Origin: Haplodiscus bocki
Taxonomy: Eukaryota
Direction: 5' to 3'
Length of the DNA: 64,000 bases
NCBI GenBank assembly: GCA_965655095.1
Contig: OZ296658.1
Coordinates: 57,908,001-57,972,000 of the forward strand
Under the pieces are notes generated by a model. The model saw nothing but the letters and a program-made list of their open reading frames with translations. It was not told the DNA's origin and did not search any database. Shown in pieces: positions 403 to 50,789 of this stretch. The stretch's first letter is position 1, and every line of letters starts with the position of its first letter. Both the position numbers and the translations under genes were made by a program.

Positions 403-1702
403 TTATTATCCCGCGAAAAGCGGGATATTGCAATCACCTTCGTGTGTCTGTCTGTTTGTTTGTTTGTTTGTTAGCAGGATTTCTCATAAACTACTGGTCG
501 GATTTCGATGAAATTTGGTGAGTAGGGAGGTAATGATCATAGGAAGACCGAGTTCAAATTTGGGTGTAATCCGGATTGAAATCCGGATCTGAGATCCGGA
601 TAACTGTTTCCCATGAACTACTGGTCGGATTTTGGTAGTGGGAAAATATAGCCAGTCTTTCAGTGCAGTAGTGGTTCATACATATATACAACTTATTCCG
701 ACGATGACTTGCACAAAGGTGGAGGAGTGGTATATATGCGAGTCTCGGGAGATGGAGATTGTGGGTTCGATCCCCTGTGATAACAGATAATTTTTCAATT
801 TTGTATTTTGTTACTGTTCTGATCCGCGGGACAATTATAAAATTTCGTGGTCACCGGGGATTCAACACACAATCTTCATCTCCGGAGTATCCCGTCTGCA
901 CCACTGCTGTACACTGTCACAAGATGACCAGAGAAATGGTCGTTTATAAAACTGTGTGGACGCAAAGACACAAAAAGGATCAGTGATCTGAAATATCAAC
1001 GACTGGGCTACGATCAAGAAAATCGGAGGGTCCAAGGGCTTTCGCGGGATCAGCGCTCTCCGAGTGCCATTTTTTTTGTTTGTTTGTTTGTTTGTTAGCA
1101 GGATTTGTCATAAACTACTGGTCGGATTTTGATGAAATTTGGTGAGTAGGGAGGTAATGATCATACAAGACTGAGTTCAAAGTTGGGCGTGATCCGGAAC
1201 GAAATTCAGATCTGAGATCCGGATAACTGTTTCTCATGAACTACTGGTCGGATTTTGATAGTGGGAAATATAGCCAGTATTTCAGTGAAGTAGTAGTTCA
1301 TACATATATAACAACTTATTCCGCCGATAACTTGCGCAAGGGTGGACGAGTGGTATTTATGCGAGTCTCGAGAGATGGAGATTGTGGGTTCGATCCCCGG
1401 TGACAACAGATAATTTTTCAATTTTAAATTTTGTTACCGTTCTCATCCGCGGGACAATTATAAAATTTCGTTCTCACCGGGGATTCAACCCACAATCTCC
1501 ATCTCCGGAGTATCCCGTCTGCACCACTGCTGTACACTGTCACAAGATGACCAGAGAAATGGTCGTTTATAAATCTGTGTGGACGCAAAGACACAAAAAG
1601 GAACAGCGATCTGAAATATCAACGACTGGGTTACGATTCAGGATATCGGAGGGTCCAAGGGCTTTCGCGGGATCTGCGCTCTCCGAGTGCCATTTTCTAG
1701 TT
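403..1702 (+). mobile_element. Tandem dimer of Helentron-associated non-autonomous element (HINE/DINE-1-like), ~620 bp units
   Basis: 5' subTIR ATCCCGCGAAA (408-418), (GTCT/GTTT)n microsatellite, 3' subTIR TTTCGCGGGAT (1040-1050 and 1663-1673), each followed by stem-loop GCGCTC-TCC-GAGTGC; ends CTAGTT. Two near-identical units head-to-tail. Confidence 0.8.
711..923. ncRNA. Convergent pair of tRNA(Arg-like)-derived heads in HINE unit 1 (repeated at ~1334-1546)
   Basis: Plus copy has A-box-like TGGAGGAGTGG and B-box GGTTCGATCCC. Minus copy reads ...CTCCGGAGATGAAGATTGTGTGTTGAATCCCCGGTGACC. GAAGATTGNGGGTTCGA resembles the tRNA-Arg variable/T arm. Confidence 0.55.
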
Positions 1703-43205: not shown

Positions 43206-44185
43206 GAAATGTTCCGCATCTCCAAAACTAAAAACTAATGTGTCTTTGATATGAAGTTAACTGATGGTTAAAACTGCGAGCCCAGCGGAGGTGAAGCGAA
43301 AGAAGTGGTAGATCAAATTTAGAAAAGAGCCAAATATTCATCATCAACTTTTGTGGTCGCCACCAAAATCAGTGAAAAATCCGATGATTACGCAGTTCAC
43401 CTTGCGATGCCCAAATTAGGCAACCTGTTGTGAGAAATCTCTCAAAAAACAACTAGAACAGATGCACTTTCAAGTAAAAGTAAGCCTCAATTGATCCAAT
43501 AATTTTAATCTAAGAGATACATACAATTGTGAGATCGGAATTACATTTGGACTACGGGCTGGTTCACCGTTTTATGAAAGGTTTAGAGCCGGTGACAATA
43601 AATCAAATTTACTTCACATTTTGTTTTCTCAGTGGAGGGCAAAATGCATCTATATCTTTCGGGTGACGTTTATTAAATTTGTTAGTTTGTCAGTTATGAC
43701 CTTTGAAAGTTACTGAAGACTGTCCAGTTATCACTTTCATTTTTATTTTTTTACTTTAATTATTTTGGAACGTGTTGAAAGATTTGAGCAACTTTGAACT
43801 TAACTAAATACAGCGAAATTGCAGAGGTTGAAATTGCAGCAGTTAAAATTGCACCGGATGAAATAGAATTGGACGAAATGACATGCAACAAAAAGAACCA
43901 ATCCAAACCAACCACGCCCAAAGTACCAAAAAACAAATAATTCGAAAAAGTTCGGAGTTTTTGCGTTTTTGTTAAAGGCCAAGTTTATAAAGTTGGAAGC
44001 CACGAACAGCTTGCAGATTTTCAATTTCTGCAAATGTAAAAATGGAAAACCATTGAATTTGAAAACTACAACGAAAAACAAACCTGTTGTAAATTCACGG
44101 CGGACTCTTTTTTTTCGTTTTTCTTCTTTCATCCCCCTAGCATGAACCAAATATATGCGAGAGGGCCATTTTTGAAAATTTGGGT
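43206..44185 (+). repeat. ~1 kb inverted repeat, left copy (partner 50790-51763)
   Basis: Continuous high-identity reverse-complement match, e.g. GTTCCGCATCTCCAAAACT vs AGTTTTGGAGATGCGGAAC; runs into the gap. Confidence 0.9.
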
Positions 44186-44385
44186 NNNNNNNNNNNNNNN
44201 NNNNNNNNNNNNNNNNNNNNNNNNNNNNNNNNNNNNNNNNNNNNNNNNNNNNNNNNNNNNNNNNNNNNNNNNNNNNNNNNNNNNNNNNNNNNNNNNNNNN
44301 NNNNNNNNNNNNNNNNNNNNNNNNNNNNNNNNNNNNNNNNNNNNNNNNNNNNNNNNNNNNNNNNNNNNNNNNNNNNNNNNNNNNN
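44186..44385. other. Assembly gap (200 N)
   Basis: Run of N. Confidence 1.
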
Positions 44386-45168
44386 TGAAAACTGTTATTT
44401 ATTTTGTGAAACTGCGAGAAGCTTATGAGCAGTCTTTTTGTCTTCCACACTCGTCTTGCAACCAGAGTAGGCAGCCTCTTTCAGAAGAACCTTTGGTATG
44501 TTTTTGACAAACCAACTAAGGCCTCTGTTGATTAAAAAAACTGGAGTGTTGTTGTGCTTCTTGTTGAAAATATCCTTGCAAATCTTTTTGTTGTGCGGGC
44601 AGTTTCGTTTTTGAAAAAAAATCGAGCAGATCGAGTTTATTAAAAAAATTACGTGTTTTGTGAATAGTTCAAATAACCAACAACTCTAGATTTCATCAGA
44701 CATAAAAAGCCAAAACCAATCCCAGCTTTCGGCTGTTTCAGGAGAAAAACTTTTCTGATGTGAGTAAGAAATCAACGTTAACACCACCGGCTAATTTTTG
44801 ACCAAAAGTTCTCGATAGCAAAATGGAGTCGTTTGGAGTAGGTGGTCGATTTGGAAAAAAATTGAAAAAGTAGTTTTGATCAAAAAATTGTTTCAAATTT
44901 TGGCAAAACTCTCACTGACTGCACCCAGTGCCCTTCGTTTTCTTGCCAGGATATTTCTTGGATTTTTGACATTACTTGCCAAGATCTTGGTAATTTTTGT
45001 TGGCAAGGTTCGCAATATTTTGAAAGATTTTTCAAGATCGTGAAAAGAAATCCAGGAAATTTCTTGGTGTTTTTGTCAACAAAAGCAAGAACAACCAGGA
45101 TCTTGGCAATAGAAACAAAAAAAGCTTGCATGTTGTTGTTGTTGTTGTTGTTTGTTGATTGCCTTAGC

Positions 45169-48100
45169 TCAGGAGGCGGCCTCAGTGGAATCATCGTCTT
45201 GCAAACGGAGGAAATTGGCTGCTTCTGTTGGGGAATCCCAGAGTGATAGCACGCACAACTTTGTAGGGTTTGCTTCACAGTAAAATAGATGGTTCGTTGT
45301 ATGCTTCTCCTTGTTGCAATCCGGGCATAGATCTGAGTCTTCTACTCCCGTACGCTTGAGATATGCTCGTAAGTGAGGTGAGTATCCACTTCGTAGTTGC
45401 GCCAGAATTCCGCTAGTTTTGCGTGATAACTTCTCTTCATCTGCGCTGAATTCTGGTGCTGGAAAAATGAGGACTTTATTGTCTTCGCGTGTATCCATGT
45501 AGTCTTCTACCTCGTTGGTATGGATGGACTGCATCATTGATTTGTAACGCTCACGAGAAGATAATTCATCATCTTAATCGGAGTCGCGAAGTGCTTCTAT
45601 GTAACGTTGGTATCTCGAATTGAGGGATTGTTTTGTTCTGGCAAGTGTTCTTTTATGTAGTCTGCTTCCAGGGTGATTCCGGATATGGTGTTTGAGTTGT
45701 TGTTGTATACTCTTCATTCGAATGTGTCTGCGAATCGGTAGGATTTTGCATTCGTCGTGCAGATGCTGTATCGAGGACATGGTTGTGCAACCTGTTGCGA
45801 CTCGTAGCGCCGCATTTTGCACTTTCTGCAGTTTTTCAATTGCACTCGGTGCAGCAGCAGGGGTCGAGACCGGGCATGCATATTCCAAGACTGGTTGCAC
45901 GAAAGCTTTGTAGCTATTGAGCAGTGTCTCCTTCTGTTGACCCGAGGTGGTTCCACTCAAGGTTTTCAGAGTGTTTACCCTTTTTGCTGCTTTCTGGCGT
46001 GATAGAGAACAGTGTGGTCCCCAGGAGAGTCCTTTGTCAACTGTCAGTCCGAGGATTTTCGGGTTTTTCTTGACCTCCACGATGGTGCTGTTGACTTTTA
46101 CAGCAGGCTTGCATTTGTAGTGTTTCGTCCTTGGAGGGAAAAGCGTGCTTGAGCATTTTTCTAGTGACACTTCCATTTGGCGTTGCTGTAGGAACTCGCA
46201 TAGCTGCTCCAGGTAAGCTAATATTTCTGTAGCTAATTAGTCCACATCGTTGCCCTTCGCGTAGACGTTAAAGTCGTCTGCGTACTACACCAGGTTCATG
46301 TGGGCTGGAGGTAGAGGAGCGCCACTAACATAGAAGTTGAATAAAGTGGGTCTTAGTACAGAGCCTTGTGCGATGCCAAATCGGACATTACGGCTTTTGG
46401 AGAGGGAATCGCGAAACATAGTCCTCGCTTGTCTTCGGTGCAGGTAGCAGGCCAGCCAGCGGGTTACATATCCCGGTAGTGACGACCTGGTTATGTCTGC
46501 GAGGAGGATGTTGTGAGAGACTAGGTCAAAGGCTTTCGACAAATCCAGGGCTACGAGAAGCGTCCTTTCGGCTGGAGGCTTTTTGTTGAAGCCATCGGTA
46601 ATCGCAGCTGATATCTCGTTCCGAGCCGATGTCGTCGAGTGATTCCTTCTAAAGCCATGCTGAGGTTGTTTGCATTTCAGGTGTTTCTGGATGGTTGGTA
46701 ATAGGCACTTCTCGAGAATTTTGGAAGCAGGGCATAGAAGTGCTATAGGGCGATACGATTTACTGTCGTTTACTGGTTTACCAGGTTTGAGAAGAGGAAT
46801 TAGTGTCGATTGTTTCCAGATAGAAGGTTAGGTACAGGTTGATATAGAAATGATGAACTTTTTTGTCAGATAGCAGAGGGCTTCGAATACAAGATGCTTC
46901 AGATGAATCATAGTGATCCCATCGGGCCCGCCGCTTTTGAGCTTTTGGCTGCTCGAATTGCTTCTTCGACCTCGGGAACAGTGAAAAAAGTGCCGTTGTC
47001 TAGGCTTCTTTTGCTTATCTCCCTTCGGATGACTCGATGTTGTTCCGAGTTGCTGTGCGGCTTCGGCGAAGTGAACTGCTTGTTAAATAGTTCTGACATA
47101 TATTTGTGATCAGTGATAGTTTTCTTGCGTTTTGAGAATTTGATTTTGATCGGGTCATTCATTTTGATTTTTGTTGCTTTGTTATTGAGACTCTTTATGG
47201 TCCTCCATAGTTTCGACGAGTTAGTTTTGTGGTCGAAAGAGCTGATGAACTCGCGCCATTTTTTTTCTTTGCTTTTGCGTATCGACATCTGAATACGGCT
47301 ATTTAGCTCCTCAATTTTTGGCGAGTGTGGTTCACGGGCTCTTAGCTCGTCTCTTTCTGTCATCCATTCTTTGGCTTCGTCTGAGAGCTGAGGAATCACG
47401 TCCTTGCGTCTGCCTGACGGAATGTGGTGTTTCTATGCTGTGTTTATGACATTCCGCAGTACAGCGTCACCTTGGTATACATCCGTTGGTCCAGGTTGGT
47501 TTCTGAGCGCACTTTCTATTTCTTCCTGGAAAGCAGGCCAGTCAGATTTGGCGATGTTACTGAAAGTGCGCTTGGGGGCGCGGATGAGTTCCAGGAATGA
47601 TGAGGATTAAATGGATATGAGGATTGGTAGATGGTCTGATCTGAGACCGATTTCGGTCGACCAATCGCAAGAGGTCAGCAACGATTTCGTGACCAAGGAG
47701 AAATCAGGGAATGTCGGCGGCTGGTTCGAGGGCAGGCGGGTAGGGCAGTTTTCGTTCAGGTTTCCCATTTCGGACTCTTCGATCTCTGCTGAGAGTTTGC
47801 TGCCTCGAGTGTCTGCGATCGTCGAGAACCAGGTTGGGTCGTGAGCGTTGGCATCCCCGAGCAGCAGGGCGTCCTTATGCGAGAGCAGGCTTTTGAGGGT
47901 TTCTTGGTAAACTGGAGGGCAACTGCTCTTAGGAGGAAGGTAGAAGTTGAAAATCTTCAGTTCCAGATTGCCAAACTTCACCTTGATGCCCTGCGTCTCG
48001 AGGACCTCGTCGCTGTGTTGTGGGATTTTTCTAAACTCGATACTTTCATGGATGATGAAAACCAATCCTCCACCAGGTTTGTTGTTGGGGTGATCTTGTC

Positions 48101-48635
48101 TGATGAAGTTGTAGCGAGATCCAAAATCAGGCGTCTTGCTTTTGCTCGTTAGTTTCGTTTCTTGGATGGCGGTGATCGATAGCTGGTGCTTTTGAATGTA
48201 AGCTGCAAATTTTTCCTTCCTTCCACTGATACCATTGCAATTGAACGGCAGGAGTCGTCAGCAGGTCTGTTGTTGGGTTGGATGTGGAGGAGGTGGTGGC
48301 GGTGGATGGTTCATACATTTTGTGCAGGACCAGTTATAAGATACGTGGCTGGCGTTGCTGAAAGGGGTGCATTTGTAATGGGCATACCTTCCGCATTTAG
48401 GGCAACGCACGCTTCCTTGGTTGTTCAAGGGTTTGCGACAGATACATCAATTCCATCTAGGTCCAGGATTTGTTTCAATGCCAGCTTGGATGAGAAGAAT
48501 CCGGAGCAATTCGGCCGGCGTGATTTGCTCCGTTGTCAAAAACCCGATTCCAGTTGAGGCCTCTCTTCTTCTCGAAGGAGGGATGATTGTCCAGCGTTTG
48601 ACCGCTGAACTTCCATTTGCACGGAGGAGCATCAT
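45169..48635 (-). pseudogene. LINE polyprotein: 2A-like peptide, PHD-like finger, APE endonuclease, reverse transcriptase, CCHC finger
   Basis: ORF pieces 48447-48653, 47607-48065, 46908-47399, 46285-46542, 45574-46176 and 45169-45537 are colinear; PHD-like CICRK..VRCPKCGRYAHYKC..WSCTKC. Confidence 0.88.
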
Positions 48636-48676
48636 TCGTGTTGGGTCCACCACGAAAAGGCGGAATGATTGGACCC
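48608..48676 (-). ncRNA. Predicted HDV-like self-cleaving ribozyme at the LINE 5' end
   Basis: P1 GGGUCC/GGACCC, P3 GCC/GGU, L3 UUUUCGU, P1.1 UU/AA, P4 CACG/CGUG, J4/2 CAAAU, P2 UUCC/GGAA; begins exactly at the TSD boundary. Confidence 0.65.
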
Positions 48677-50789
48677 AAAAAAAGCTCGCATCAAAATATT
48701 ACAAGATCTAAAGGTATCTTACAAGCAATTATCCTTGAAAGCTCAAAAAGGAGCTACTTTTGCGTAGGTTTTTATCTAAACCTCAACTTGGCCTGACCCA
48801 AAAGAATGAAGCAAAAATATATTGAAATAAAATGGACTTCAAAATCAAACATAATGGAATGAAAAAACTGGTCCAAACTTCCTTCGTCAAAATGTGTGAT
48901 TTTTTCCATCTTTTTCGGGGTTACAAATAAAACGATTTGACGTTGGAAAAAGTCTTGTCCAAGCTTTCTTCACCGAGTGCTAGAAACCTAGATCCAACAA
49001 AAACTGCTTCGCCGAATTTTTTTTCCTAGAAATGCAACTGACGTTTCAGTCACGTCTGTTTGCGTTCAAAAAAGATTCAAAATACTGAAACAATAAAAAC
49101 GAACAAGTAGAACGTTCTGAAAAGATTTTTTTTTTCAGTCGGCGCAGTTTTTACCAAAAATCTTTCAAAAAATAAACTGCAAAATGCGGGAAACGTAGTC
49201 AAAGAATGAGACTCCGTTTTACATAACCAAAAAAATATTTATAAACTAACTTATGGTTATAAAAACAGCTGTTACTTTCTTCTTTGAATTTCACTGGCAT
49301 GATCTTGGATTTTTTGGCAAGATCTTGATTTTTCTTGGATTTCTTGGCAAGATTTATTGCCGAGCTCAAGAAATCCAAAATCTTGGCAAGAAAACCAAGG
49401 CGCCAAGCACTGGGCAGCTTCGGCTCTTTTGAACCATCCGCATTTGATGCATTCTACAATCAAAACAACCGTCGAATTAGAATTCATAGAAAAAGAAATC
49501 AGCCGAAATTTTGTAAAAAAAAACCATTTGGACTATTGGACTATCAGGTTATCAGTGCCAAGTATAAAGACTGTAAAAATTGTCGTGCAAAATTATTGAC
49601 GAATTAGAAGGGTGTCGAAAGGGACTTCTGCGGAAGAATATCGAAAGGTTGTAATGGAATAAAACAATTGTTAACATCGCGAGAAAGCTTCACTCGCATT
49701 TCCTGTCATTCTAGGGACCAGCAGGTCTCCAATGTGAAGACCAACAACGATGTCTTCAAGAGGAAGTAGCTCTAATGAATTGAAAACGGTAAATTTTATA
49801 GCTGATGGATGAGATCAAAACAGGGTTAAGACATTGCAATGGTTGTGGATATCGGAAAAAATCATAGTAAGTACATTTTCGGTAATCTCGAACTATCAGC
49901 ATTTTGGAATGAATTACAAAAGTCAGACTTCAATCCTAATAGCCTTCCAATGAGATTTTACAGGAGAAAATGAAGCCGAATTTTTGAAAGAAAATAGTTT
50001 TGCTGGCCGAGAGCCCTCGGTATTAGAAAATTTTAGGAATATAAGAACTATCAAGAACTCAATCTAAATATTAGCAACGTCAATTTCTTTCATGAATATA
50101 TTTCTAACAGAAAGAATGGAAACAAACAATTTTGAAAGCACCCACTTGTAGGCCATGCATTCTACTTATTCCTCACAATCTAACATTTTAAATCGCAATC
50201 ACATTCGGTTTATTCTTGACAAAAATGTTTGCTACAATGATCAGATTGAAATCAGTTGTCTTTTCGGACAAACTGCTTTCTTACCAATCGGTTCCTGAAA
50301 ATGCCATCAAAACCTATTTTAATTTTTTTCCGTCAAAATTTTAGGTACAAAGCAAACTATTCATTTTAGAACAGGAGTTCTTTTCCTTTTTTTGATGATT
50401 AATTTAGTTTTAATCACACTGCCATGTGAAAAAAAAGAGCAGGAAAAAACCAACGAGTTTGAATAAGACAAAACTGCTGCTCTCAATAATGAGACGAAAC
50501 CGCCAACTTTGTAACTCAGAGCTAACCGCTCAGACAATTTTTTTGACCTATTTTTGATAAATAGCAATTATCTCACCAACTACTAATACAAACTGCAATT
50601 TCATTAACTGATTGAAATTTATTTCAATTTTTTTTGCGATCAACAAGTTTTCAAAATGCAAACACTGAAGTTTTTCATGAAACCTTCTTTTCCCCATCCC
50701 AAACTTGTGGTATCCGGACCATATGTTTGTGAACCGAACTTTTCCGAATCACTGAAATTTCTCCTTCTGAAAAAACTAAAACGCCAGGA

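What the first reader, a model, noticed from the sequence alone, without database searches (positions are those of the whole stretch)
48608..48676. HDV-like ribozyme with U-A P1.1 and the ORF start codon inside P4
Seen: the first 69 nt of the LINE fold into the HDV double-pseudoknot order, starting at the element boundary. L3 is UUUUCGU with AA after P1, where HDV has CC/GG, which looks compensatory. AUGAUG of the ORF lies in the P4 loop. Known: HDV-like ribozymes occur at 5' ends of R2, RTE and L1Tc/ingi elements. Inference: it defines the 5' end by self-cleavage and may position translation initiation. An alternative pairing AUCAUUC/GAAUGAU would sequester the AUG and could act as a switch.
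Basis: partly seen in the sequence, partly recalled or inferred. Interest (0 to 1): 0.7.

Follow-up and report, generated by a model that had tools for sequence, protein, structure and literature searches.

The report
HDV-like ribozyme heading a 2A LINE
The first 66 bases of a dead 3.5-kb jumping gene (a LINE) fold as a hepatitis-delta-type self-cutting RNA that would trim the transcript to its exact 5' end. The fold is real and kept in distant relatives, but the device is already known from other LINEs.

Summary
Confirmed. On the minus strand, 48676..48611 threads onto the complete HDV-like double pseudoknot: P1, P2, P3, L3, P1.1, P4, J4/2. My descriptor scan found this site and one unrelated locus in the whole window. 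The null rate is 0.9 loci per 127 kb.

G48676 is the exact 5' end of a 3.5-kb single-ORF LINE (45132..48676), and 11 of 14 genomic copies that reach the 5' end start at GGGUCC (one more has a G2 substitution). Target-site duplications abut G1.

Relatives from other assemblies share 35-48% protein identity. Seven of ten, plus one further element in this genome, carry the same fold 180-260 nt upstream of their 2A (NPGP) site. All helices covary. P1.1 is UU/AA here and GC/GC, AU/AU or AC/GU elsewhere. The core nucleotides are invariant: L3 U and G, and J4/2 C-A-A.

- The first ATG of "AUGAUG" is a private G-to-T change. The family has one AUG, at +45 in the P4 loop.
- The proposed 7-bp switch helix exists only in this copy.

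Cleavage is untested and no Rfam cut-off is met. This is a new member of a known kind. The scan has already noted HDV-like ribozymes on other LINEs of this genome. The pairing of ribozyme and 2A peptide recalls L1Tc.

The parts
48611..48676 (-). HDV-like ribozyme, 66 nt, G1 = 48676; predicted cleavage 5' of G48676
   Evidence: Descriptor hit; sub-threshold full-length Rfam RF02682 alignment, 15.7 bits; covariation with relatives
48671..48676 (-). P1 5' strand GGGUCC (nt 1-6), pairs with 48643-48648 (nt 29-34)
   Evidence: 54/54 cells paired over 9 lineages with 2-4 pair types per position
48662..48665 (-). P2 5' strand UUCC (nt 12-15), pairs with GGAA at 48611-48614 (nt 63-66)
   Evidence: P2 differs in sequence in almost every lineage yet pairs in 48/48 cells; 0 of 20000 permutations match
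48649..48661 (-). P3 (GCC/GGU, nt 16-18 with 26-28) enclosing L3 UUUUCGU (nt 19-25)
   Evidence: L3 U1 and G6 invariant in 9/9 lineages, C5 in 8/9. P3 changes to GCU/AGU, GGG/UCC and GCC/GGC in relatives
48641..48642 (-). A35 and A36, the 3' half of P1.1, pairing with U21 and U20 of L3 (48656, 48657)
   Evidence: P1.1 was not part of the covariance model but is paired in 92% of cells, with both pairs changing on both sides. Permutation 20/20000
48620..48640 (-). P4 hairpin (CACG/CGUG stem, 13-nt loop)
   Evidence: A truncated sister family in this genome has CACAU/AUGUG at the same place. P4 is a hairpin of different sequence in every relative
48615..48619 (-). J4/2 CAAAU; C58 (48619) is the candidate catalytic cytosine
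   Evidence: C-A-A invariant in 9/9 lineages. It fits the C-R-R-A rule of the published descriptor (PMC6326823)
48630..48632 (-). Family start codon AUG (nt 45-47) in the P4 loop. The ATG at 48633-48635 is a private mutation of this copy
   Evidence: 12 of the 13 other copies read GAAGGATG (L014 has GGTTG); first in-frame AUG of the 2A ORF
48459..48509 (-). 2A ribosome-skipping peptide, ending AGIETNPGP, in frame with the AUG in P4
   Evidence: Translations; NPGP lies at +179 to +258 from the ribozyme start in all ten lineages
45132..48676 (-). Whole LINE copy: ribozyme, then a single ORF (2A, Cys/His-rich finger, APE endonuclease, RT, C-terminal Cys/His motif), then a (CAA)n tail. The ORF is broken by many stops in this copy
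   Evidence: blastn of copies; Pfam PF14529, PF03372 and PF00078 on a better copy; translations
48677..48691 (-). 5' target-site duplication, 15 nt, directly abutting G1
   Evidence: Same 15-mer, with one mismatch, at 45117-45131 after the tail
45117..45131 (-). 3' target-site duplication

Best explanation
The first 66 nt of this LINE's RNA form an HDV-like (hepatitis delta family) self-cleaving ribozyme.

Inferred mechanism: when the element is transcribed, from its own start or as part of a longer host transcript, the ribozyme folds co-transcriptionally. It cuts the phosphodiester 5' of G1 (48676), with C58 in J4/2 as general acid and the L3 G24-U19 pair holding the metal ion. The retrotransposition template then begins exactly at G1 with a 5'-OH.

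Shown here: full-length insertions in the genome all begin at G1, next to their target-site duplication. The fold is under selection across a clade of single-ORF LINEs that carry a 2A peptide. P1.1 in this clade is A-U-rich or a single base pair instead of the canonical two C-G pairs.

Inferred only: the uncapped, ribozyme-headed RNA is then translated from an AUG embedded in P4 (+45). The 2A site about 55 codons downstream releases the leader peptide, which is encoded partly by the ribozyme, from the endonuclease-RT protein.
For: 1. Fold and rarity. The site gives a full descriptor match, one of two in 128 kb, against a null rate of 0.9 loci per 127 kb.
2. Exact 5' boundary. Eleven of the 14 copies that reach the 5' end start at GGGTCC with unrelated upstream DNA; one more has a G2 substitution. 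Target-site duplications abut G1 in the window copy, L020 and L023.
3. Relatives. LINEs with 35-48% protein identity and an N-terminal 2A motif carry the same architecture in L035, L036 and L039 (strict descriptor). Model R1 plus manual parsing adds L040, L042, L044, L037 and L059.
4. Covariation over 9 lineages:
   - P1: 54/54 cells paired
   - P2: 48/48
   - P3: 26/27
   - P1.1: 15/18
   - Permuting 3' strands among lineages reaches these values in 1, 0, 73 and 20 of 20000 trials.
   The tool count on A3 gives 96.9% paired against 71.1% in shuffles (0/500). The covariation score is 0.633 against 0.188, and slid controls give 26-50% paired.
5. Catalytic core. L3 U1 and G6 and the J4/2 C-A-A are invariant, and L3 C5 holds in 8/9. 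These match the published descriptor: U19, C23, G24 and C-R-R-A (PMC6326823).
6. Sub-threshold Rfam hits land exactly on the element. RF02682 scores 15.7 bits over the full model at 48677..48609. A relative hits the CPEB3 ribozyme model at 25.6 bits.
7. Other LINE families in the same genome carry canonical CC/GG HDV-like folds at their 5' ends.
Against: - No cleavage assay and no RNA 5'-end data exist.
- No Rfam family reaches its gathering score.
- Two U-A pairs in P1.1 are weaker than the canonical two C-G pairs and may slow or abolish catalysis.
- In three relatives only one P1.1 pair forms.
- My segmentation of four relatives (L040, L042, L044, L037) was chosen with the fold in mind, so their 100% pairing is partly by construction.
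- The permutation tests ignore phylogeny.
- The nested MFE fold has only a modest z-score of -1.84 and does not show P4.
- In the window copy the upstream U-run could extend P1 onto A35-A36 and compete with P1.1.
- All seven copies examined have broken ORFs, so the family may be extinct.
Confidence: 0.8

Rival explanations
1. The HDV-like fold is conserved but no longer self-cleaves. It would serve as a structured 5' end that protects the RNA, recruits ribosomes (IRES-like), or is recognised by the element's own protein during second-strand synthesis.
For: P1.1 is weak here (two U-A pairs, or one pair in L040, L042 and L037). The start codon sits inside P4 in two lineages. HDV-like ribozymes on retrotransposons are reported to promote translation initiation (Ruminski 2011, as cited in PMC13725137).
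Against: The residues conserved are exactly the catalytic ones: L3 U and G, and the J4/2 C. The 5' ends of insertions coincide with the predicted cleavage site to the nucleotide. L1TcRz cleaves with a single-bp P1.1 (PMC3185411). A translation role and cleavage do not exclude each other.
Confidence: 0.1
2. The precise 5' end comes from an internal promoter that starts transcription at G1, and the ribozyme-like fold is secondary or incidental.
For: Many LINEs have internal promoters. In L1Tc the same 77 nt act both as promoter and as ribozyme (PMC5814959). Nothing here distinguishes a transcription start from a cleavage site.
Against: Covariation in five helices shows selection on RNA structure, not only on DNA sequence. 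Helix sequences differ almost completely between lineages, which a DNA promoter motif would not tolerate. A promoter could still coexist with the ribozyme.
Confidence: 0.07
3. Chance resemblance to the HDV fold in a GC-balanced 5' UTR.
For: HDV descriptors are loose. My own produces about one false locus per 140 kb. Rfam scores are below threshold.
Against: The chance of a hit at one given position is about 7e-6. The same fold recurs in seven of ten independent relatives from other assemblies and in a further element of this genome, with compensatory changes.
Confidence: 0.01

Closest known systems
HDV-like ribozymes at the 5' termini of non-LTR retrotransposons (R2, R4, R6, SART, Baggins, RTE; Eickbush & Eickbush 2010; Ruminski et al. 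2011, known to me through citations in PMC3774820, PMC4908430 and PMC13725137)
   Same: Nested double pseudoknot. Cleavage site at the first nucleotide of the element. Conserved L3 and J4/2 core. Proposed roles in 5' processing from co-transcripts and in translation initiation.
   Different: The host element is a 2A-bearing single-ORF LINE of another lineage, with a Cys/His finger between 2A and APE. Its clade was not determined here. P1.1 is U-A/U-A instead of C-G/C-G. P1 is 6 bp. The ORF's AUG lies in the P4 loop. I could not read Ruminski 2011, so I cannot say whether AUG-in-P4 was described there.
L1TcRz / Pr77 of Trypanosoma cruzi L1Tc (PMC3185411, PMC5814959, PMC4035085)
   Same: An HDV-like ribozyme occupies the first ~77 nt of a single-ORF APE-type LINE that also has a 2A peptide at the N-terminus of the ORF. 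P1.1 is non-canonical (one base pair). Cleavage is at +1.
   Different: L1Tc is a kinetoplastid element with RNase H and a poly(A) tail. This one is in an animal-type genome, has a (CAA)n tail and shows no RNase H hit. No sequence similarity between the two ribozymes was shown here. Promoter activity is unknown for this element.
[quoted passage not shown] 2013, PMC3708506)
   Same: A 2A motif in the N-terminal region of a single long ORF. A PHD-type finger lies between 2A and APE in some families (Crack, CR1 and sea-urchin STR elements).
   Different: That paper never mentions a ribozyme (0 occurrences). Here a ribozyme sits 180-260 nt upstream of the NPGP site in every lineage examined.
Rfam RF02682 (HDV-F-prausnitzii) and RF00622 (CPEB3 ribozyme)
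   Same: Full-length alignments land on the same coordinates and in the same helix order. L3 UCUaCGU in RF02682 compares with UUUUCGU here.
   Different: Scores are far below the gathering cut-offs: 15.7 against 44 bits for the window, and 25.6 against 35 for relative L035.

Membership tests
HDV-like self-cleaving ribozyme | Strand order of the nested double pseudoknot: P1, P2, P3, L3, P3', P1', P1.1, P4, J4/2, P2' | tested here: met
   Descriptor match at 48676; all helices covary in 9 lineages
HDV-like self-cleaving ribozyme | Cleavage site at the first nucleotide of P1, with G1 paired to a pyrimidine | tested here: met
   G1-C34 here, and G-C or G-U in 8 of 9 lineages. Genomic copies and target-site duplications place the element's 5' end at G1. 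The chemistry itself was not tested.
HDV-like self-cleaving ribozyme | L3 with conserved U (first position) and C-G (positions 5-6), giving the reverse wobble U-G | tested here: met
   L3 is UUUUCGU. U1 and G6 hold in 9/9 lineages and C5 in 8/9. Descriptor taken from PMC6326823.
HDV-like self-cleaving ribozyme | P1.1 pseudoknot forms between L3 positions 2-3 and the two nucleotides after P1 | tested here: met
   U20-A36 and U21-A35. The inner pair forms in 9/9 lineages (U-A, C-G, U-G) and the outer in 6/9.
HDV-like self-cleaving ribozyme | P1.1 made of two C-G pairs, as fixed in the canonical search descriptor | tested here: not met
   Two U-A pairs in all copies with an intact L3. Natural exceptions are known, for example the 1-bp P1.1 of L1TcRz.
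HDV-like self-cleaving ribozyme | J4/2 reading C-R-R-A and holding the catalytic cytosine | tested here: met
   C58-A-A-A; C-A-A is invariant in 9/9 lineages
HDV-like self-cleaving ribozyme | Self-scission giving a 5'-OH product, abolished by mutating the catalytic C | not testable with these tools
   Needs in vitro transcription and cleavage assays
HDV-like self-cleaving ribozyme | Score above an Rfam gathering cut-off (RF00094, RF02682, RF00622, drz families) | tested here: not met
   No gathering hit in the window. Best is RF02682 at 15.7 bits against 44.
2A-bearing single-ORF APE-type LINE (Odon 2013) | [quoted passage not shown] | tested here: met
   AGIETNPGP lies 55-58 codons after the AUG. 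APE and RT domains by Pfam.
2A-bearing single-ORF APE-type LINE (Odon 2013) | PHD finger between 2A and APE | tested here: inconclusive
   A Cys/His-rich stretch is visible, but Pfam gave no PHD hit for this family. Relatives have only faint PF00628 or PF27108 hits.

The most novel reading that the evidence does not exclude
The ribozyme, the embedded or nearby start codon and the 2A site may form one conserved 5' expression cassette of a metazoan LINE clade. Self-cleavage leaves an uncapped, structured 5' end. Ribosomes start within or just after the ribozyme. The 2A skip, at a fixed distance of 180-260 nt, discards the leader peptide whose codons are constrained by RNA structure. The same logic in trypanosome L1Tc would then be homologous or convergent. 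The A-U or one-pair P1.1 would mark a distinct ribozyme subclass that canonical CC/GG descriptors miss.
Probability: 0.3. Interest if true: 0.6.

Novelty: new member of a known kind. Interest (0 to 1): 0.38.

Why it matters
- It adds a well-supported lineage to the retrotransposon HDV-like ribozymes, with covariation in all five helices.
- Searches that fix P1.1 as CC/GG overlook a whole subclass with A-U-rich or single-pair P1.1.
- The ribozyme sits at a constant distance upstream of a 2A skipping site in single-ORF LINEs. This was known for trypanosome L1Tc, and the main survey of metazoan 2A LINEs does not mention it.
- That arrangement gives a concrete, testable system for how uncapped ribozyme-terminated LINE RNAs get translated. 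In two lineages the AUG lies inside P4.

Tried and rejected
- Rfam at gathering thresholds found nothing in the window. Only sub-threshold hits appeared.
- The 7-bp alternative "switch" helix is rejected. It is private to the window copy, drops to 5 bp in the family (93/500 shuffles reach that) and is absent in relatives.
- "AUG in P4" as a general rule is rejected. It is in frame only in this family and L039. L035 and L036 have out-of-frame AUGs in P4 and start the 2A ORF downstream. An AUG somewhere in P4 in 6 of 9 lineages is only weakly above expectation.
- A 7-bp P1 (A7-U28) is rejected in favour of a 3-bp P3. When position 28 becomes C, G16-C28 forms while A7 stays A.
- The thermodynamic fold is only modestly better than shuffles (z = -1.84), predicts P1 but not P4, and cannot show pseudoknots.
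- MAFFT alignments A1 and A4 misplaced gaps and were not used for pair counts.
- L041 has a 26-nt internal duplication that makes its fold ambiguous, so I left it out of the counts.
- The L043 hit and the second L044 hit of model R1 are false; the L043 hit lies in the 2A coding region. L038 and L043 showed no ribozyme, possibly because their contigs are incomplete.
- The sister family L027/L028 is 5'-truncated inside another repeat, so it informs only P4 and P2'.
- Ruminski 2011 (PMC3308841) is not held.
- The protein atlas search did not help to assign the LINE clade.
- I met no contig that I took for human and no spliced gene model.

Full report
**Observation**

Read on the minus strand, the window from 48676 downward begins with GGGUCC. 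It threads onto the HDV-like order of strands. With G1 = 48676:
- P1: nt 1-6 with 29-34
- P2: nt 12-15 with 63-66
- P3: nt 16-18 with 26-28 (GCC/GGU)
- L3: UUUUCGU (nt 19-25)
- P1.1: U20-A36 and U21-A35
- P4: CACG/CGUG (nt 37-40 with 54-57) with a 13-nt loop
- J4/2: C58-A-A-A-U

I wrote an explicit descriptor requiring:
- G at +1
- P1 of 6-7 bp
- P3 of 3 bp
- L3 of 7-8 nt
- a two-pair P1.1
- a P4 stem of at least 4 bp
- a C followed by 2-4 nt in J4/2
- P2 of 4-6 bp

On both strands of the 64-kb window it hits only this site and one unrelated locus near 1209. Forty composition-matched random sequences gave 0.9 loci per 127 kb, about 7e-6 per position.

Rfam gives no hit at gathering thresholds. 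A permissive scan of 501 nt aligns the whole RF02682 model (HDV ribozyme of F. prausnitzii) to 48677..48609 on the minus strand, at 15.7 bits against a cut-off of 44. The nested MFE fold recovers P1 but is only modestly better than shuffles, z = -1.84.

**The element**

A DNA search of the window's own genome (1.5 Gb) found 14 copies that reach the 5' end. Eleven begin exactly at GGGTCC with unrelated upstream sequence. One more (L010) has a G2 substitution, and two (L003, L013) have altered first 2-3 bases.

Full copies are about 3.53 kb and 93-96% identical. In the window the copy spans 45132..48676.

It ends in a (CAA)n tail and is flanked by a 15-nt target-site duplication (48677-48691 and 45117-45131, one mismatch) that abuts G1 directly. 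Duplications also abut G1 in L020 (12 nt) and L023 (11 nt). L018 has two extra nucleotides and L019 nine extra nucleotides at the junction.

The element encodes one ORF with these parts, in order:
- an AUG at +45
- a leader of about 55 codons
- a 2A ribosome-skipping motif (AGIETNPGP)
- a Cys/His-rich finger
- an APE endonuclease (PF14529, PF03372)
- a reverse transcriptase (PF00078)
- a C-terminal Cys/His motif

Every copy I examined has stops or frameshifts, and the window copy has many. I did not determine the LINE clade.

The "AUGAUG" is specific to the window copy. The other 13 copies read GAAGG at this spot and 12 of them keep GAAGGATG (L014 has GGTTG), so the first ATG is a private G-to-T change at nt 43. 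The family AUG is in frame with the 2A ORF and is its first in-frame AUG.

The same private change creates the proposed 7-bp alternative helix AUCAUUC/GAAUGAU. In the family sequence the best alternative helix between J1/2-P2 and P4 is 5 bp, which 93 of 500 shuffles reach. No relative has anything better than chance. The switch idea is therefore not supported.

**Relatives and covariation**

A protein search with the N-terminal 477 residues of a better copy gave 146 relatives. Many start with a 2A motif. I fetched ten encoding contigs from other assemblies.
- The strict descriptor found the same architecture in L035, L036 and L039. About 0.005 false hits are expected per region scanned.
- A covariance model built from three sequences (P1, P3 and the P4 base only), plus manual parsing of its weak or partial alignments, added L040, L044, L042 and L037. 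It also found a further degenerate element in this genome, L059.
- L041 has a 26-nt internal duplication and was left out.
- L038 and L043 showed nothing.

In a structure-guided alignment of nine lineages, the segment lengths P1 6, P3 3, L3 7 and P1.1 2 are identical throughout, while the helix sequences differ.

| Helix | Cells paired | Permutations reaching this (of 20000) |
|---|---|---|
| P1 | 54/54 | 1 |
| P2 | 48/48 | 0 |
| P3 | 26/27 | 73 |
| P1.1 | 15/18 | 20 |

The permutations reassign 3' strands among lineages.

P1.1 reads UU/AA here, GC/GC in L035, GU/GC in L036, AU/AU in L039 and AC/GU in L044 and L059. In L040, L042 and L037 only the inner pair (U-A) forms.

The tool count on the model-derived alignment A3 gives the following:
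- 96.9% of cells paired against 71.1% in shuffles (0/500)
- covariation score 0.633 against 0.188
- 26-50% paired when partners are slid by 1-3 columns

P1.1 was not part of the model, yet it is 92% paired with changes on both sides in both pairs.

A 5'-truncated sister family in this genome (L027, L028) shows CACAU/AUGUG where this family has CACG/CGUG in P4.

Caveats:
- Four segmentations were made with the fold in mind.
- The permutations ignore phylogeny.
- A3 contains two false rows.

**Catalytic core**

These positions are conserved across the nine lineages:
- the first L3 nucleotide, U: 9/9
- the sixth L3 nucleotide, G: 9/9
- the fifth L3 nucleotide, C: 8/9
- the J4/2 triplet C-A-A: 9/9

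They correspond to U19, C23, G24 and C-R-R-A of the comparative descriptor restated in PMC6326823. There, U19-G24 is the reverse wobble needed for catalysis and the J4/2 cytosine is the general acid. That descriptor fixes P1.1 as two C-G pairs, which this family does not meet. Natural exceptions exist: L1TcRz works with a single-pair P1.1 (PMC3185411). Sanchez-Luque et al. also noted that the original screening rules were too restrictive (PMC4035085).

**Mechanism**

Shown:
- a conserved, covarying HDV-type fold with the catalytic residues in place
- an element 5' end that coincides with the predicted cleavage site

Inferred from established knowledge of HDV-like ribozymes on R2, RTE, Baggins and L1Tc elements (PMC3774820, PMC4908430, PMC5814959):
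- co-transcriptional self-cleavage 5' of G1 frees the LINE RNA from upstream transcript
- the ribozyme therefore travels with every new copy

More speculative: the uncapped product is translated from the AUG in P4, and the 2A site releases the leader.
- The NPGP codons lie +179 to +258 from the ribozyme start in all ten lineages. I did not find this constant arrangement described for metazoan 2A LINEs.
- Odon et al. 2013 never mention a ribozyme.
- L1Tc has both devices.
- HDV-like ribozymes are reported to promote translation initiation. That is Ruminski 2011, which I could only see through citations; the paper itself is not held.
- The AUG lies in P4 and in frame only in this family and in L039.

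In this particular copy, the U-run just upstream of G1 could extend P1 onto A35-A36 and compete with P1.1. This effect is described for L1TcRz and R2.

**Context in the genome**

Searching the genome with RF02682 found three better-scoring HDV-like folds (31, 27.8 and 27.5 bits). Two (L024, L025) sit immediately upstream of APE-type ORFs and have canonical CC/GG P1.1. Earlier notes of this scan (s1-376489, s1-369351) record HDV-like ribozymes at other LINE 5' ends in the same genome. The device is thus common here, and the scan has found it before on other DNA.

**Verdict**

The switch hypothesis and the generality of the AUG placement do not.

It is a new member of a known kind. Three points of moderate interest are the A-U P1.1 subclass, the AUG inside P4, and the fixed ribozyme-2A spacing, which parallels L1Tc. 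Catalysis remains to be shown. I met no human-like contig and no spliced model.

Noticed in passing
window 48459-48509 (-): The LINE ORF carries a 2A ribosome-skipping motif (AGIETNPGP) about 55 codons after its start. In the window copy a stop follows three codons later.
   Followed up: partly
L024:1501-1570, L025:1501-1569 (G000:C2:71497782-71497851 and C2:96258063-96258131): Another LINE family in the same genome starts with a canonical HDV-like fold (CC/GG P1.1; RF02682 at 31 and 27.8 bits, below the cut-off of 44). An APE-type ORF follows.
   Followed up: partly
L026:1501-1566 (G000:C8:86077800-86077865): A third HDV-like candidate (27.5 bits) with L3 UCUUCGU and A-U after P1. No obvious LINE ORF appears in the next 900 nt.
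   Followed up: no
L027 and L028 (G000:C2:130402641.. and C8:22966058..): A sister family, about 70% identical, survives only as two copies truncated within the ribozyme. Both are embedded in the same upstream repeat, so the fragment was duplicated as part of a larger unit.
   Followed up: partly
L059:1501-1569 (G000:C7:7331210-7331278, -): A degenerate ribozyme of the same type in this genome. It has a C-C mismatch in P3, an AUG in the P4 loop and an NLGP motif at +241.
   Followed up: partly
L041:117-213: A relative's ribozyme carries a 26-nt internal duplication spanning P3' and P1', which leaves two alternative P1 3' strands.
   Followed up: no
L019 5' junction (G000:C9, near 64757490): One full-length copy has nine extra nucleotides between its target-site duplication and G1. 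They could be untemplated addition or a short uncleaved leader.
   Followed up: no
window 1209-1290 (+): The only other hit of my HDV descriptor in the window. It lacks the conserved L3 and J4/2 nucleotides and looks like a chance match.
   Followed up: no
window about 44000-44250: A run of 200 N (assembly gap or mask) lies just downstream of the LINE. It was left untouched.
   Followed up: no
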